Source: Dimorphilus gyrociliatus
Taxonomy: Eukaryota; Animalia; Annelida
Direction: 5' to 3'
Assembly (NCBI GenBank): GCA_904063045.1
Contig: CAJFCJ010000007.1
Span: 2,983,404-3,047,403 of the forward strand
Length of the DNA stretch: 64,000 nt
The first letter of the stretch is position 1, and each line of letters begins with the position of its first letter. Below the pieces are notes generated by a model, which did no database searches, was not told where the DNA came from, and saw only the letters and a list, made by a program, of their open reading frames with translations. The position numbers and the translations under genes were made by a program. Shown here in pieces: positions 45,423-52,861 of the stretch.

Positions 45423-45803
45423 ATTAAATGTTTCTCTATTACTTTTATTATTATTGTTTCCTACTCTTTATCCTCTTCGTCTTCCGTCTAAAATCAAGAA
45501 CTTTATTTTTCAACAATAACAGCAACAAAAAAAAAACACTTAAAAGCTTTTTGTAAGCTTCTTTTTCTTTTTTAAATAATAACAAAGAATAACATAAAAT
45601 ACAAAAATTAATCTGGTAATTTAAAGAGTTACTATAATTATCAATTTAACTCGGATTAACGATTATTGATTTATTCTTTTTAACAATTAATCCAACTTTA
45701 TTACTAAAAACGCCATCTATACAGCTAAAAGTGCAAAAAAGTGCTACGAAAAGTTTTAAACCCCAGTCCAAACACGTTTAAAGTTAATCAATACAGCCGA
45801 AAA

Positions 45804-46411
45804 ATGGTTGACTCACTACCAACAGTTAGAGATACTGAAGAATTAATTACGATTGAGCAAATATTAGACAAGAGAAGAAAAGCTCTGGGAGAGAAGGAAC
45901 TTTGGAGTGTATTAAATGAATGTCTTACTGCTGTAGACGACGCTTTAGCGGCTAATTCAAAGGAATTTATAAAATTTTCAATATCTCCCGACACCGTTGG
46001 AATTAATACGAAAAATGGTAAAATACAATTTGTCAAAAGTTCTAAGGAAATTGACGATCTTTATACCGCACCCGAAGTTCCTCTCAACGCTTCTAGTCAA
46101 GTATTTTCTATTGGTATTGTTCTACTTTATTGCGCTTCATACGGAATCAAAGCAAGCGATGAATTACCGGAAGTCGCTGTTGACTTTTTAGGCATAATCG
46201 AATCAATGACAAGAAACGATTACGCTTCTCGTATGAAGTTAACAGAGGCTCTAAAAATAGTAGAAGAGAGATGTTTAATTCCATCAAATTTAGTTTGTAA
46301 GAAAATGGTTTCAGAATGGAAAACTTTCGAGGTAATATTACTTTTTATTCATGAATATTAATGAGCGTTTTTTTTATGTGTCGATCCTTATCAGTGTATG
46401 ATATCTTTTAA

Positions 46412-46451
<40 letters not shown>

Positions 46452-49400
46452 ACGCACGAACACACACACACATATATATACACATACTTACACCTACACA
46501 GTGTATATTTCTTATAGAATTTTTATTAAACTAATTATTGACCTAGTTTAAAGTTTATCAAATTCTTTCGACTACTTTTTTTTCTACATCACAGAATTTA
46601 TCATGTTATTCTTAGAGATTATCTTTCTTTTCAAAAAAGAAAACTGAAAAATGACACATAATTAATTTTTATAGTAAATATTTTTCCTTCTTTTTATCTT
46701 CTCATTGAAGTATTCCGTATATATAGTATTACAGTTAAAAAGAAATAAAAGTACGTAATATAGGCCTAGAATTAATCCTTGAATCATTTTACTATAAACA
46801 ATAAATTCGTATTAGTATAGCCGATGTTATTTTTTTTGTTTATATATTTTTTGTTCTGTTCTAGAGTTCAAACTTTTAACGATCACACGATTGTTGTATG
46901 GGCATTTTTTATTACTTTTTTACTTTATTATAGGATGAAAGCGATTGCTTTTTGGAACGGGAGGTGTCGCTTATGTATACCACTGATGACGACCAACAGA
47001 TGGCGTTTAAATGGAAGATACAAAGGAAATTTCAATGCAAACCAGTCGAAGAACGATCAGACAGTGATAAGGACGATATTGTAAACGTGCCTTATCCTGA
47101 TATGGATAAGAGCGTTAGTTTGCAAGTCGTTTTAGAAAAAATAGGCTGTGGTTTAGAAGAGAGAGAACTTTGGGCAGTTTGTCATCAAGTTTGTAAATGC
47201 CTCGAAGAGGTTGAACAAATACGTAAGTATTTTTAACAATTGTTTTTATTATCATAAATACCTATCATATTTTTCATATAAAACATGACCTAGTTTCTCT
47301 TATTTTTCAATAGCTACCTACCTGAGCACAGAAACAGTTTTATTAAACGAAGAGGGCCGAGCGTCTTTTTTATTAAAAGAAAAACAAAATGTTGATCCTA
47401 TTTTCCTCGCTCCTGAGGTGACATCCCAAACTAAAGATCCTATAAAGACATGCCTCTTTTCCTTAGGGATTTTACTCTTTCAATGTGCCGACTTTAGGTT
47501 GCCCGCCAGCCGAAGTCCGGGTTTAAGCCCAAAAATTGAGGCCCTAATCGATGCCCTAGCCGACGACGAAGTATTAAATAGACCAGATTTAAAAATAGTT
47601 CTCGAAGAATGCGAAAAATCTTGCGCAGAAGAAGGACTTAATCCCAGTGATTTATGCTCCAATCTGGCTAAAGACGCACAAGTATTAGTTGAATGCCAAA
47701 GAGGAAAGGTAGAAGAGGATAAAAATCCAATATGGAGAAAAATCATGGACGAAATACAATCAGGAGTTGAATTGAAGCCAAAAGAGGAGAGAAAAATTCA
47801 ACTAAAAGAGATAAAAGAAGTTCACACGGCTAGAGATCTGCTTTTACAAGGTACTTGTGAATTTAATTTTTATAGACTATCATATAAAAAGTTAGTAATT
47901 ATTTACTCAATGCTGTTAAAATACTAAAAGTGTGTTGTTTATCCTTAACAAGTAACTTTTTTATGTCCGACTCCCCCTCAAACTTAAACCTACCCCCGCG
48001 TCTTTCCCGTTCGTCTAACCTCCTAAAAAGAGGAAAATAATTAAAAGGGGAAATGTTATAAGACTTATTTTCCAGTGTTTACTTAGTCCATATAATTTTA
48101 GGGAATTTAAACTAATTAAACTAATTGTTAGCCTTTGGAATCCATTTGTCAAACTTAACAAAACCTTTGTGAAAATTGTCACTCGTCAAGGTGGGTAATT
48201 AGCCGCCGGAGAAGGAAAGGTCGCAGATTCCAAATAAACTCAATTATTTATAAATTCTATACAAAATTTCTAATTCATTTCATCTTTAGTTATTCAATTT
48301 CCCTATACTAAACGGAATGTTTTGTAATTATACGACTATAACAACTGAAAACCGTATGAAATTATTACAAGAATGTTATCACGAGCTGGACACGAGTAAC
48401 ATCAGGTGATTTGTAAACATCCATTATGTTAGCCTATCTTGAACCAGTTTCTTTTGTCATAAAATTCTCATAGTAGGAGGGGGGTATTGTCCTTTTTTTT
48501 TACTATTTCTAGTATAACCGGAAACGGAAATTTATAAAAAAGTTCTTTCTTGATAAGATCAATTGTTTAAACCGTTGTTAGGTCTTTTCAAACTAATGCT
48601 TAAATTATACCCTTAATTGCATATTGTAGACAACTCATTCCTTTCATTGTTCATTTTACAATCGATTTTTATTAGGTATAAGAAGAGGTAAGAAACTCAG
48701 ACGGTGCTCTAAGCCGAAAATTGCCGACTTTAGAGATTGGTTAACAAAGGAAGATATGGAAAGGTTAAAGAAATTTAACAACATCTCAAAAGAATCTGAC
48801 AAAAAAATAAAAGAAGTTAGAGCAATAAAAGAATCAATCAAAACTCCATCAGTGCCCGCCTTTTTCCCGTTCGAGGGGTTGTCTCCAAAATGGGCCCTTA
48901 TCCCTATTGAACATTTGGAACCTCGCCCTAATAAAAAGTTGCATAGAACGAAATCTGACCTAACAATAAGAAAACGACCCGGAACACCCCCCCCAGATCT
49001 CAGGCAGACTGTTAGACAGGTATAATTTTAGTATTATTTGCAACAATCTCAAGGGTTAATTCGAGGTTCTTTGGGTAAGGTTTTTTTTTAAGCGTTTGAT
49101 ACTTCTCTCAAAAATAAGGTCCAATTCCCAGTGTAAACCTCAAATCCTTTTACTTTTGTCGTAAGTTCATTGTTATAAGTACTCCCATTGTCAATTGGAA
49201 AAACCCTTTACTTTGAGGTCGCTTATTTAAAAATAAGCCTATCCCCACCTCTGTCTACTTCTCTCACGTTATAATATTTTTACTACTGATCGTACTATTA
49301 TTATTACTATTGGGACTAGTTTAATATGATTATTATTAAATAGTACTTATATTTATTACTATTGTTTGTACTATTAACTCTGATTGATATTTATATTTTG

Positions 49401-52400
49401 CGATATTTTATTTAGGTTAAAGCCAAAAGTGCCTTTAAGAAGGTTCATTCGCCACCTCCTTTGCCACTTTCGCCAGTTAATACTGACTCTGGTATCAGTG
49501 GGACATCTTATCTCTTGGATAAACTTTTGGGCGGAGAAAGTGCCAAGAGGCAGAAGAAAGTTACTGGAGTTGTTCGAATTTTAAGGGAAGAGTTTAGTTG
49601 GGATACTTTCATTGATAGTACAATAGAAGAGGCGAATATGGCTGAAGATATCGTTAATCTGGCGGGATTGTCTAGAAAAACGTTTGGTTCGGCTGTAGAA
49701 GAAAAATGGTCTGACTTTGCATGGTCCGACCAATTGTTAAACTCCCTTTACCGTTTCGTTTCGGAAGACGACGATGAGTCAAAAATGTCAATAAAATCAG
49801 TTGAATACTCGGGTCGAAGCACTCCCCGAAATCAGGGTTAGTAAACACGTATTTCCGCTTCTCGTTTAACTTAAAAGAAAATAAGTTATTGTTCAAAGTT
49901 TACCAAAGTTAAACATTAATAATAAACTAAGTACAGTGTTTGTAGAGCGATAATATAAGAATAACAAAATTCACACCAAAAGTGATATTTTCTTTCAACT
50001 TCAAAGAATGGAAAAGAGTGACAATAGGATAGATCTTTTTTGAAAATAGTATATAAAATATAGCATCAAATTTCATAACCTATATATTTAAATATCAGAT
50101 TTTGAAACTATATCTTATACGTTTACAAAGAGAACGTTAAACTATTTCTTGAAATGTTCAAAAATGCTTTTATTACCTTCTTCAACGATTGTAAAACTAG
50201 GCGTTTATATATCTACTCTTTACAGCTATTTACAATAACATTTCGTGTCGTATTTCCAACAGGACTTCAAGGTCATTCAACACCCTATGGCGAAATTTTT
50301 CCGCATAGAAATTCACTAATTAATCGTAGTCTATCAATTCATAATGAGAATTTTAATAGACCTTTCATTTGTAATATTCAATTGGATGATGATCATTCCT
50401 CATCGAAAACTAGTCGTGTTCAATCACCTAAACTAAAAAAGTCGAATAATTTATCACATAGTCTGTTAAATATACAAGACCTAAAAAGTGGTCAAGGACA
50501 AATGATAACTGTTTTTGACGATACCGAAAAGGTTGAGCGAGTACGAAGTGAAACCATGCAGCCGAATAGAAATGTTGTTGATCGAAATAGAATGTTGCAA
50601 GGTCGAGATTTAACTTTTCGTAGAACGGAAATCAATAGAGCTCAATCGTTATACGACGTTAGAGAACCAAAGAAAATCATCTGTGGTCCGGTTGCTAGAT
50701 ACACAACCGAGTCTGGTGATGATATGTCCGAGAGCGAAAAGAAACTTTACATAAGGCGAGCCTCCTCTGAAATTCAGACTACAAAATCCTACTCGAACAT
50801 AGAAACTGGCAGATGTTCTCTCTATCCGAAACGTTTTCCTCCTAGGGAAATAATATATTTTAGTAAAGACAATTCTAATTTCGTTATTGAAAATAAAAGG
50901 ACAATATCCGATTTGGATCAACAGATATTCATAAGAGAAAGAGAGAGGAGAACCGCGGCTAGGCATGCTCGCAAGCTAATTGATATTGGTGGCCGAGGTC
51001 AATTAACTACAAGAATACTAGACCAACTAAGATCTCTAACCGAAGATGTTCAACATCTTAAAAAAGAAAAGCAACGAATACTAGCCGCTCAATTTGACGA
51101 CCAAGCGTTAGATAGCTGCTATTTATACGCTTTGGCTCATTTACAGAGTGACAGCGAATTCCGCTTGATTAATTGCCATAATGCTTTCATTCAGAACGGC
51201 CCTGATGATGAATTCTTTGCTGGTGATCCCGAAGGTTTCCTGGCTCAATTATATGGAAAGGGTGTATTTTCTAACGATTTTGTTCGAGTATTTTTCATAA
51301 CCTATCGCTATATAATGTCAAGAGAGGTTTTAGCCGATTTCTTATTATCCAAACTGAAATGTTTTGAAGACGCTGAACTGACGGATGAAGTTGATATGCT
51401 AAAAACCAGAACAGCTTTTCTTATTGCCGTATGGACGGGTTTGTTTAGGGAGTGTGATTTTGGCGTTGATGACTATGGAGAAAGATTTAATGCGCGTCTA
51501 TTGGGTACAATTGACAATAATTCCAACTACGATTGGCTAGAAGTTAGAGAGAATAAAGAGAGAAATCTGGAATCGGATTCTGAGGATGAATTCGATATGC
51601 TTTGTACGGCTCATCAAAATTTCAAGGTCAAGATCAAAAAACCCTTACCAGAAGGTGATTGGTCTCTATCTGAAATTGATCCTGACCGTTTGGCTGAACA
51701 GCTAACTCTATTGGAGAAAGAACTTTTCGATGTTTTACATCCAATAAATGTCCTTAATTCAAAAGGTCAAGGAATTGATATAACTCTTTTCACTAAAGTT
51801 CTCATTGATAGAGCTAGCAACGTGAGAAGATCGTTGAAAAATCGTCGTACGGAATCTGAAGAATCCTTATTCGTTGGAACTTACGCTTTTGACGATCGCT
51901 TGGCTGATGTGGTACAAAGAAGTTGCGATATCACACATTGGGCAGTCGCAGAAATTTTAAGATCAAATTCCAGAAGAAAGAATCTTATTCAAGTAATACT
52001 TACGGCAGAAAAATGCTGGAATTTATGCAACTATTCAACATGTTCATCACTTATCGATGCATTGGACATGGTTCTCATCAGAACTTTAGATTGTTGGAAA
52101 AGTTTACCAAGTAACATTGACAAAATAGTCAAGAAATTAAATAATTATAAACTACTAATGCAAACGAATCCAGTTCCAAAAACGGATAAACCGTATCTAC
52201 CTCCAATAGCCTATTTACTAATACATATTCAAAAGGCTGAATCGGGTAATTTCAAACTGGCGAATGGAATGTTCAAATACTCAAAGTTAAGGACAATTGC
52301 TGATTTAGCTGACCTAGTTAGAAGAAGAGGTTCATATCATACAAAATTAAATAGCGATCTAAACTTACAAAGAATACTACGAAGAAGAATAACTCAACTA

Positions 52401-52508
52401 TCAAGAGCAGATTTACAAGCATTAGCAGCCGTGGCCCATAAGACACCAGCTAATAGTGGAAAATTGAATTTCTTTTCTCAATTTGCAAAGAAATTTCTTA
52501 ATAATTAA
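45804..52508 (+). CDS. KNDC1: Very-KIND / KNDC1: KIND1, KIND2, WH2-like pair, REM (RasGEF_N), CDC25 RasGEF
   Basis: KIND starts ITIEQILDKRRKALGEKELWSVL and VSLQVVLEKIGCGLEERELWAVC, with IFLAPEV. REM region FFITYRYIM. RasGEF LAEQLTLLEKELF..LHPINVLNSKGQG...NYSTC. Exons 45804-46331, 46934-47222, 47313-47850, 48676-49020, 49416-49837 and 50264-52508. Confidence 0.9.
46412..46480. repeat. (CA)n microsatellite in KNDC1 intron 1
   Basis: Direct reading. Confidence 0.95.
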
Positions 52509-52861
52509 AACAATAATAAAAAATAAGAAAAATTGAATGATATTTTTTTACTATTTGTTTGTTTATTTGTTTTTATTTTGTCTAATTAAGTATTTCCATT
52601 AAAAAGTTGTATTTTTTCTTAATTAAGTTGTTTTTCTCTTTAAATATTTGTTAATGATGATAATAATGACAATAATAATAATATTTTATGAAAAAAATGA
52701 TTCGATTCTTTTTGTCTATCAATTTTCTCATTCATTATAATTTCTCTTAAGGAACACAACTAAAAGTTCTTTGTACGCATTAATATATCCTTCTTTTTTT
52801 TCTCATACGCCAATTATGGGGGCAGTTAGTAAAATCTAACACAAATTATCTTCAATAGTCT

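What the first reader, a model, noticed from the sequence alone, without database searches (positions are those of the whole stretch)
47721..48710. v-KIND RasGEF contains a Spire-like KIND-WH2-WH2 cassette (actin-binder/GEF hybrid)
Seen: right after KIND2 the spliced protein reads IWRKIMDEIQSGVELKPK-EERKIQLKEIKEVH-TARDLLLQG|IRRGKKLRRC. The second motif is split by intron 47851-48675, so it is invisible in the ORF track. Both fit WH2 (amphipathic helix + G..L[KR][KR/P]). From memory, Spire has KIND followed by FWVQVMRDLRNGVKLKKV-14 aa-TPYEMLMDDIR, the same order and linker length. A PPPLP motif follows at about 49451. Vertebrate KNDC1 is usually described as KIND-KIND-RasGEF without WH2. Inference: this protein may bind or nucleate actin and recruit formin while activating Ras, and may preserve a shared Spire/v-KIND ancestor.
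Basis: partly seen in the sequence, partly recalled or inferred. Interest (0 to 1): 0.72.

Follow-up and report, generated by a model that had tools for sequence, protein, structure and literature searches.

The report
Spire-like actin-binding motifs in KNDC1
An invertebrate version of the Ras activator KNDC1 (very-KIND) carries, right after its second KIND domain, two short conserved motifs that closely resemble the first two actin-binding WH2 motifs of the actin nucleator Spire; this hints at an unrecognised link between this Ras activator and actin, but actin binding itself is untested.

Summary
The gene at 45804-52508 (+) is a KNDC1/very-KIND orthologue with KIND x2, RasGEF_N and RasGEF. 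An intron-free 4408-nt contig from a public run uses the GT..AG junction 47850|48676, so the mRNA encodes motif 1 (IWRKIMDEIQSGVELKPK), a 14-residue spacer, then motif 2 (TARDLLLQ-G-IRRGKKLRRC).

**For a WH2 reading:**
- The exon-3 tail aligns without gaps over 38 residues to Spire1 WH2-A, its spacer and the start of WH2-B (z 6.4; 0 of 3000 shuffles).
- Its only PDB hit is the N-WASP WH2 tandem (E 0.07, weak).
- Against a close relative the element shows pN/pS of about 0.07.
- A homologous element sits after KIND2 in KNDC1 of the annelid Owenia and of amphioxus. It was not found in the vertebrate, mollusc, echinoderm, hemichordate or coral orthologues examined.

**Limits:**
- Pfam WH2 hits none of these, but it also misses genuine Spire1 WH2-A and WH2-B.
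- No paper in the searched library links KNDC1 to WH2.
- Actin binding, nucleation and formin recruitment are untested. A mammalian very-KIND KIND domain is reported not to bind Fmn2.
- Motif 2 also fits an IQ (calmodulin) core.
- The spliced motif 2 has no reference, so it was not sent to any search tool.

Verdict: a real, constrained element, probably WH2-like; a new variant of a known protein family, of moderate interest.

The parts
45804..46331 (+). Exon 1: start codon and KIND1 domain
   Evidence: ATG at 45804 in ORF 45741-46361. Pfam KIND weak hit. BLASTP to KIND1 of named KNDC1 orthologues, E down to 1e-17. The upstream part of the X2 contig reads ...KMVSEWKTF, which is the end of this exon.
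46934..47222 (+). Exon 2: acidic linker and N-terminal part of KIND2
   Evidence: Piece of the spliced X2 contig, placed at 46932-47222 because the aligner cannot resolve the AG. Translation; Pfam KIND positions 1-37.
47314..47850 (+). Exon 3: rest of KIND2 (to about 47690), motif 1, spacer, first half of motif 2
   Evidence: Contig joints 47222->47314 and 47850->48676. Translation. KIND2 alignment to orthologues ends near ..LCSNLAKDA.
47730..47783 (+). Motif 1, WH2-like: IWRKIMDEIQSGVELKPK
   Evidence: Spire1 WH2-A similarity. (N-WASP WH2 tandem is the only PDB hit, E 0.07). (low-confidence model: helix at 138-149, then a non-helical GVELKP). Conserved in the relative with one Q->E change.
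47784..47825 (+). 14-residue spacer EERKIQLKEIKEVH
   Evidence: Same length as the Spire1 spacer QQRQYNPLPIEYQL between LKKV and TPYEM, and the same length in Owenia and Branchiostoma KNDC1.
47826..47850 (+). Motif 2, first half: TARDLLLQ plus the first base of a Gly codon
   Evidence: identical in the relative.
47851..48675 (+). Phase-1 GT..AG intron splitting motif 2; contains conserved non-coding blocks
   Evidence: Skipped in the X2 contig. About 85% identical to the relative's intron.
48676..48707 (+). Motif 2, second half: (G)IRRGKKLRRC
   Evidence: The relative reads IRKGKKLRRC behind the same acceptor.
48676..49019 (+). Exon 4: motif 2 end, charged helical stretch, degenerate 'PAF..SP...IPI' motif, Pro-rich end
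   Evidence: Contig piece 48674-49017, cut +2; translation.
49416..49836 (+). Exon 5: SAFKKV, PPPLP (49452-49466) and the conserved KNDC1 middle domain
   Evidence: BLASTP to the middle region of orthologues, E down to 2e-20. PPPLP is kept in the relative.
50263..52508 (+). Exon 6: RasGEF_N (about 51219-51389), RasGEF (about 51690-52292), stop codon at 52506-52508
   Evidence: Pfam RasGEF 3.8e-16 and RasGEF_N 3.6e-05. Junction 49836|50263 is seen in both X1 (RNA) and X2 contigs. The representatives search found KNDC1 orthologues.

Best explanation
About 14 residues after KIND2, its spliced mRNA encodes a 54-residue bipartite element made of two WH2-type motifs 14 residues apart. Each motif is a short amphipathic helix (..IMDEI.., ..LLLQGI..) followed by G-x-x-L-basic-basic/Pro. 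I propose that each motif binds one actin monomer in the cleft between subdomains 1 and 3, as WH2 motifs of Spire and N-WASP do. This would tether or regulate the Ras exchange factor at actin-rich sites. With only two motifs, monomer binding or localisation is more likely than nucleation. Shown here: the gene identity, the splice, the sequence fit, the significant similarity to Spire1 WH2-A/B, purifying selection, and homology to an element in Owenia and amphioxus KNDC1. Inferred: actin binding and any downstream coupling to Ras.
For: - Gene identity.
- Splice used.
- Motif 1 against Spire1 WH2-A scores 37, against a background maximum of 26 in 81,974 positions; shuffle P 0.0012.
- A 38-residue ungapped alignment covers motif 1, the spacer and the start of motif 2 against Spire1 WH2-A..B: score 51, z 6.4, 0 of 3000 shuffles. 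The Spire1 sequence and its WH2 boundaries are those printed in PMC4574297.
- Pro at the third place of LKPK also occurs in Spire1 WH2-C (LNPV) and WH2-D (LRPV).
- Motif 2 has the same register as the N-WASP WH2 shown: LL-x-x-I-x-x-G-x-x-L-basic-basic.
- The only PDB hit of the 45-residue tail is the N-WASP tandem WH2 chain 3m3n_W, E 0.07.
- The nearest named clusters by language-model features are WH2 (WHAMM-like) and thymosin, for both the window tail and the amphioxus element; scores of about 0.8 make this a lead only.
- Constraint: 14 synonymous against 4 non-synonymous changes in 54 codons versus the relative, pN/pS 0.07, compared with 0.12 in KIND2.
- The element is conserved after KIND2 in Owenia (..LLDEIQNPPRKLRKT..) and Branchiostoma (..LLEQIQKPPHGLRQV..). 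Owenia vs Branchiostoma z 15; window vs Owenia z 4.0, P 0.003. A loose WH2 pattern matches these two proteins only at that place, where about 0.1 matches per protein are expected by chance.
Against: - The Pfam WH2 model gives no hit on motif 1, on the Owenia or amphioxus elements, or on any of 30 orthologue segments. The weight of this is low, because the same model misses the genuine Spire1 WH2-A and WH2-B peptides.
- Profiles of the element (A1, A6) and the Owenia and amphioxus segments alone do not hit any WH2 chain in the PDB.
- The Owenia and amphioxus elements are not significantly similar to Spire1 (P 0.08 and 0.12).
- The fourth residue of each LKKV-type motif is atypical: K in motif 1 and C in motif 2.
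- Motif 2 equally fits the IQ core [ILV]QxxxRGxxxR.
- The structure model has low confidence (mean pLDDT 54).
- There is no binding data of any kind.
Confidence: 0.5

Rival explanations
1. The element is a conserved docking peptide for a ligand other than actin. The most concrete option is that motif 2 is an IQ-type calmodulin-binding site, as in the neuronal Ras exchange factor RasGRF1, with motif 1 as a flanking helix. It could also bind a cytoskeletal partner such as the MAP2-type proteins bound by mammalian KIND2.
For: Read across the junction, motif 2 is L-Q-G-I-R-R-G-K-K-L-R, which fits the IQ core [FILV]Qxxx[RK]Gxxx[RK] at all 11 places. The relative keeps the fit with R->K. Strong constraint is compatible with any ligand. 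WH2 profiles do not recognise the element. That RasGRF1 carries an IQ motif and that mammalian very-KIND binds MAP2 through KIND2 are from established knowledge, not tested here.
Against: The IQ fit is absent from the homologous Owenia and Branchiostoma sequences (..LMQNLHRVTQT....LLKTLRIIRRP..). The last hydrophobic place of the full IQ consensus is not met. Motif 1 has no IQ fit. The collinear similarity to Spire1 WH2-A, spacer and WH2-B is not explained by an IQ reading.
Confidence: 0.22
2. The two helices are an intramolecular or structural extension of KIND2, for example an autoinhibitory latch on the GEF or a short coiled coil, and the WH2 likeness is convergent.
For: The element begins only about 14 residues after KIND2. 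The model predicts helices at 138-149 and 156-177 continuing from the KIND2 helices. The spacer and motif 2 are rich in heptad-like charged residues.
Against: In Owenia and Branchiostoma the same element lies about 30 and 70 residues after KIND2, behind variable linkers, which does not suit a fixed structural extension. Most orthologues lack it altogether. The model confidence for this part is below 60.
Confidence: 0.15
3. The resemblance is due to chance: a lysine- and glutamate-rich linker that happens to match a short, loose pattern and has no specific function.
For: WH2 patterns are short and degenerate. Curated profiles are silent. The comparison with Spire was chosen after the resemblance was seen, so the P values are optimistic.
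Against: pN/pS is 0.07 at near-saturated silent sites. The element is conserved across phyla at the same place. Shuffle tests that keep composition give z 6.4. Two strict matches fall within 50 residues, while none is found in 39 orthologues of over 900 residues.
Confidence: 0.08

Closest known systems
Vertebrate KNDC1 / very-KIND (brain-specific RasGEF with two KIND domains)
   Same: Same architecture: KIND1, KIND2, conserved middle domain, RasGEF_N and RasGEF. It is a best-match orthologue of proteins named KNDC1 or very-KIND.
   Different: Vertebrate proteins show no WH2-like pair after KIND2 and no Pfam WH2. Instead they carry a nearly invariant LPxAFTSxATHFxPI motif, which is degenerate here. 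The window protein is shorter, about 1454 residues.
Spire (KIND, four WH2 motifs, Spir-box, FYVE-type zinc finger), specifically WH2-A and WH2-B
   Same: A KIND domain followed by two WH2-type motifs with a 14-residue spacer. There is a 38-residue ungapped similarity to Spire1. The best PDB match of KIND2 is the Spire1 KIND domain, but it is not significant (E 0.2).
   Different: There are only two motifs, no Spir-box or FYVE domain, and the C-terminus is a RasGEF. A very-KIND KIND domain does not bind Fmn2 (PMC2064741). This protein is not a member of the Spire family.
N-WASP/WASP-type tandem WH2 (V region)
   Same: Two adjacent WH2-type motifs with the register LLxxIxxGxxL-basic-basic. N-WASP is the only PDB hit of the window tail.
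   Different: No central or acidic (CA) region follows, so Arp2/3 activation is not expected. The hit is weak (E 0.07).
IQ motif of RasGRF1-type exchange factors
   Same: Motif 2 fits the IQ core and sits in a Ras exchange factor.
   Different: The fit is not conserved in the Owenia or amphioxus element. No profile test was possible, because the motif is split by the intron.

Membership tests
KNDC1 / very-KIND | Two N-terminal KIND domains | tested here: met
   Pfam KIND hits are sub-threshold on the single exons. BLASTP of exons 1 and 3 matches KIND1 and KIND2 of named orthologues, E down to 1e-17 and 9e-19.
KNDC1 / very-KIND | C-terminal RasGEF_N plus RasGEF catalytic domain | tested here: met
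   Pfam RasGEF 59.9 bits (cut-off 23.1). RasGEF_N 24.3 bits, just under its 28.3 cut-off.
KNDC1 / very-KIND | Best matches are proteins named KNDC1 or very-KIND, including the family-specific middle domain | tested here: met
   (exon 5 hits, E to 2e-20).
WH2 domain | Amphipathic helix of about three turns with hydrophobic residues at i, i+1 and i+4 | tested here: met
   Motif 1 has I-M-x-x-I and motif 2 has L-L-x-x-I. The model gives a helix at 138-149 and at 156-177, at low confidence.
WH2 domain | LKKV-type motif (L, basic, basic or Pro, V/T) a few residues after the helix | tested here: inconclusive
   Motif 1 has LKPK and motif 2 has LRRC. The L and the first basic residue are met. Pro at place 3 occurs in Spire1 WH2-C and WH2-D. 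Place 4 (K, C) is atypical. Owenia has LRKT and Branchiostoma has LRQV.
WH2 domain | Recognised by a curated WH2 profile | tested here: inconclusive
   Pfam PF02205 gives no hit on motif 1. The same model also misses the genuine Spire1 WH2-A and WH2-B peptides. Motif 2 could not be scanned because the joined peptide has no reference.
WH2 domain | Binds monomeric actin | not testable with these tools
   No multimer prediction or binding assay was available.
Spire family | KIND followed by four WH2 motifs, a Spir-box and a FYVE-type zinc finger | tested here: not met
   Only two WH2-like motifs are present. Pfam finds RasGEF_N and RasGEF but no FYVE domain on any exon.
IQ calmodulin-binding motif | [FILV]Qxxx[RK]Gxxx[RK]xx[FILVWY] | tested here: inconclusive
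   The first 11 places are met by LQGIRRGKKLR when read across the junction; the last hydrophobic place is not met. No profile scan was possible.

The most novel reading that the evidence does not exclude
KNDC1 ancestrally carried a Spire-type KIND-WH2-WH2 cassette. On this reading Spire and KNDC1 descend from one KIND-plus-WH2 actin-binding ancestor. Some living invertebrates (this lineage, Owenia, amphioxus) would still have a Ras exchange factor that binds actin monomers directly, and vertebrates would have lost this link.
Probability: 0.3. Interest if true: 0.7.

Novelty: new variant of a known kind. Interest (0 to 1): 0.5.

Why it matters
KNDC1/very-KIND is known as a neuronal RasGEF that acts on dendrite growth through microtubule-associated MAP2. 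A direct actin-binding module has not been described for it in the papers I could search. If the two motifs bind actin, some animals have a Ras activator wired straight to the actin monomer pool. The KIND-WH2 arrangement, so far a hallmark of Spire, would then predate the split of the two families. That would give a concrete hypothesis for how the KIND module spread, and a short, testable peptide for the bench. If they do not bind actin, the element is still a constrained KNDC1 motif conserved across phyla and without an assigned partner.

Tried and rejected
- **Pfam on each exon and on short pieces:** no WH2 and no IQ hit. This was judged uninformative after the control with genuine Spire1 WH2 peptides also failed.
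- **Profile of the element from four sequences (A1) and of motif 1 alone (A6) against the PDB:** no WH2 chain was hit.
- **Owenia and amphioxus segments alone against the PDB:** no WH2 hit.
- **Attempts to obtain the species' own spliced protein as a referenced record:** the word search with the RasGEF exon and with an alignment of the right length returned only a relative's exon ORF and vertebrate KNDC1. The spliced protein therefore never had a reference.
- **Scoring the two halves of Spire1 WH2-B separately against the exons:** the pieces are too short, so no signal.
- **Shared intron position:** in Owenia the intron lies right after motif 1 (..LRK|T), not inside motif 2. Intron placement therefore gives no support. 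The amphioxus locus was not on record.
- **Structure model of exon 3:** confidence is too low for a fold search.
- **Rfam and folding of the conserved intron blocks:** nothing found.
- **Rejected readings:** membership of the Spire family, since there is no Spir-box or FYVE domain and the C-terminus is a RasGEF; and formin recruitment as a supported inference.
Full report
**Observation**

The + strand between 45804 and 52508 holds one gene. Pfam finds weak KIND matches in the ORFs at 45741-46361, 46952-47236 and 47418-47849. It finds RasGEF_N plus RasGEF in the long ORF 50154-52508.

The exon-3 translation ends ...EDKNPIWRKIMDEIQSGVELKPKEERKIQLKEIKEVHTARDLLLQ. Base 47850 plus 48676-48677 form a Gly codon, and the next exon reads IRRGKKLRRCSKPK.... 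The intron 47851-48675 has GT..AG ends.

**Is the junction used?**

Two public runs hold the stretch. Laid on 46900-52510, run X2 gives a single 4408-nt contig that skips four introns:
- 47222->47314
- 47848->48674 (GT..AG with the cut two places further right, which is 47850|48676)
- 49017->49414
- 49835->50262

An RNA run labelled coral metatranscriptome, X1, independently shows the last junction. From these data and the GT..AG reading of the first intron, the model has six exons and about 1454 residues:
- 45804-46331
- 46934-47222
- 47314-47850
- 48676-49019
- 49416-49836
- 50263-52508

X2 is not labelled as RNA, but an intron-free contig across five exons is what an mRNA gives.

**What the gene is**

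A search of 1.84 billion representative proteins with the RasGEF exon found 81 proteins, the best at about 30% identity. Their names, where given, are KNDC1, 'kinase non-catalytic C-lobe domain-containing protein 1' or 'protein very KIND'. They come from crinoids, a snail, a starfish, the annelid Owenia, a sea urchin, amphioxus, bivalves, a hemichordate, hagfish, vertebrates and stony corals.

Exons 1, 3 and 5 also match KIND1, KIND2 and the middle domain of these proteins. This is the KNDC1/very-KIND orthologue. I did not test that.

**Are the motifs WH2-like?**

Both motifs have the canonical register: hydrophobic pair, two residues, I, two residues, G, two residues, L, basic, then basic or Pro.

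A strict pattern of this form matches nowhere in 39 orthologues longer than 900 residues. By direct reading it matches both motifs in this protein, which lie within 50 residues of each other.

The positive evidence:
- The only PDB hit of the 45-residue exon-3 tail is the N-WASP tandem-WH2 chain 3m3n_W (E 0.07, weak).
- Against Spire1 WH2-A, motif 1 scores 37 ungapped. The next unrelated position in the protein scores 11, the best of 81,974 background positions scores 26, and shuffle P is 0.0012.
- A local alignment of the exon-3 tail to Spire1 WH2-A, spacer and WH2-B is ungapped over 38 residues. It runs from motif 1 through the 14-residue spacer into the helix of motif 2: score 51, z 6.4, reached by none of 3000 shuffles.
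- Pro at the third place of LKPK is also found in Spire1 WH2-C (LNPV) and WH2-D (LRPV).
- Language-model features put both the window tail and the amphioxus element nearest to WH2 and thymosin clusters. The scores of about 0.8 count only as a lead, and peptide length or composition may contribute.

The negative evidence:
- The Pfam WH2 model does not hit motif 1. However, it also fails on the genuine Spire1 WH2-A and WH2-B peptides, so this negative carries little weight.
- Profiles of the element do not reach WH2 chains in the PDB.

**Constraint and age**

A close relative was found in Logan contigs from three runs (L002-L004); L002 was read in detail. It has the same exon ends and reads IWRKIMDEIESGVELKPK ... 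TARDLLLQ | G | IRKGKKLRRC.

Silent sites are strongly diverged (pS 0.44-0.73). The 54 codons of the element carry 14 synonymous against 4 non-synonymous changes, pN/pS 0.07. This is at least as constrained as KIND2, at 0.12.

Beyond this lineage, the annelid Owenia (..FFDQLLDEIQNPPRKLRKT, 14 residues, NPELMQNL..) and Branchiostoma (..GWDQLLEQIQKPPHGLRQV, 14 residues, NPYLLKTL..) carry a clearly homologous element after KIND2:
- Owenia vs Branchiostoma: z 15.
- Window vs Owenia: z 4.0, P 0.003.
- Window vs Branchiostoma: not significant.

A looser WH2 pattern matches these two proteins only at that place, where about 0.1 matches per protein are expected by chance. The same pattern gives one other hit among the proteins scanned: a single match in the frog (Mixophyes) KNDC1 at another position, likely chance. 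It finds nothing in mammal, crocodile, fish, hagfish, mollusc, echinoderm, hemichordate or coral orthologues.

The element is therefore old, at least bilaterian if the window is from a protostome, and has been lost or blurred in most lineages. The Owenia and amphioxus versions are not themselves significantly Spire-like (P about 0.1). Intron positions differ between the window and Owenia.

**Novelty check**

- None of 30 orthologue inter-domain segments has a Pfam WH2 hit.
- None of the 92 KNDC1 proteins returned with precomputed Pfam lists carries PF02205.
- Full-text searches for KNDC1, very-KIND or v-KIND together with WH2 found nothing relevant.

**Mechanism and rivals**

My best reading (0.5) is that the two motifs are WH2-type actin-monomer binders that tether or regulate the exchange factor at actin-rich sites. 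Nucleation is less likely with only two motifs; this rests on established knowledge of tandem-WH2 nucleators, not on a test here.

A very-KIND KIND domain neither colocalised with nor pulled down Fmn2-FH2 (PMC2064741).

The rivals are:
- **Another ligand.** Motif 2 read across the junction fits the IQ core [ILV]QxxxRGxxxR, though the orthologous elements do not.
- **An intramolecular helix pair.** The variable distance to KIND2 in other species argues against this.
- **Chance.** The constraint and the cross-phylum conservation argue against this.

The exon-3 model is of low confidence (pLDDT 54). It shows helix 138-149, a break at GVELKP, then helix 156-177. This is compatible with a WH2 but proves nothing.

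**Limits**

Motif 2 was read by eye across the junction, and its halves were handled separately.

Noticed in passing
window 47851-48675 (blocks at about 48120-48235 and 48355-48500); L002:3717-4553: The intron that splits motif 2 is about 85% identical to the relative's intron, with long near-identical blocks, while silent coding sites beside it differ at pS 0.44-0.73. The blocks are single-copy in the window, have no Rfam match and show no unusual RNA fold. Run X2 has a separate 169-nt contig on 48368-48536. These are unexplained conserved non-coding elements.
   Followed up: partly
Alignment A2 (orthologue segments); window exon 4, about 48850-48910: KNDC1 orthologues from molluscs to mammals share a nearly invariant LPxAFTSxATHFxPI motif between KIND2 and the middle domain. 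The window protein has only a degenerate version (..VPAFFPFEGLSPKWALIPI..). I know of no partner for it.
   Followed up: no
P0002:548-570 and P0104:653-675 (crinoid KNDC1-like proteins): The crinoid proteins carry ..KAKIAMEAIKKGPQIPKKVPPP.., which looks like a different WH2-like helix plus basic motif followed by prolines. This may be a diverged counterpart of the element.
   Followed up: no
window 49428-49466 (start of exon 5): SAFKKV followed by SPPPLP is conserved in the relative. It resembles the repeated SAFKPV/SAFRSI motifs of bivalve and snail orthologues and ..SALKPASFRPV.. just before the amphioxus element.
   Followed up: no
window 46398-46517 (intron 1): A (CA)n / (TG)n microsatellite lies in the first intron.
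   Followed up: no
whole gene: The best matches of the RasGEF exon in a library of 1.84 billion representatives are only about 30% identical. The only close relatives are unnamed Logan contigs (78-86% identical). RNA contigs 99% identical occur in a run labelled coral metatranscriptome, which suggests the animal lives with corals or in aquaria.
   Followed up: partly
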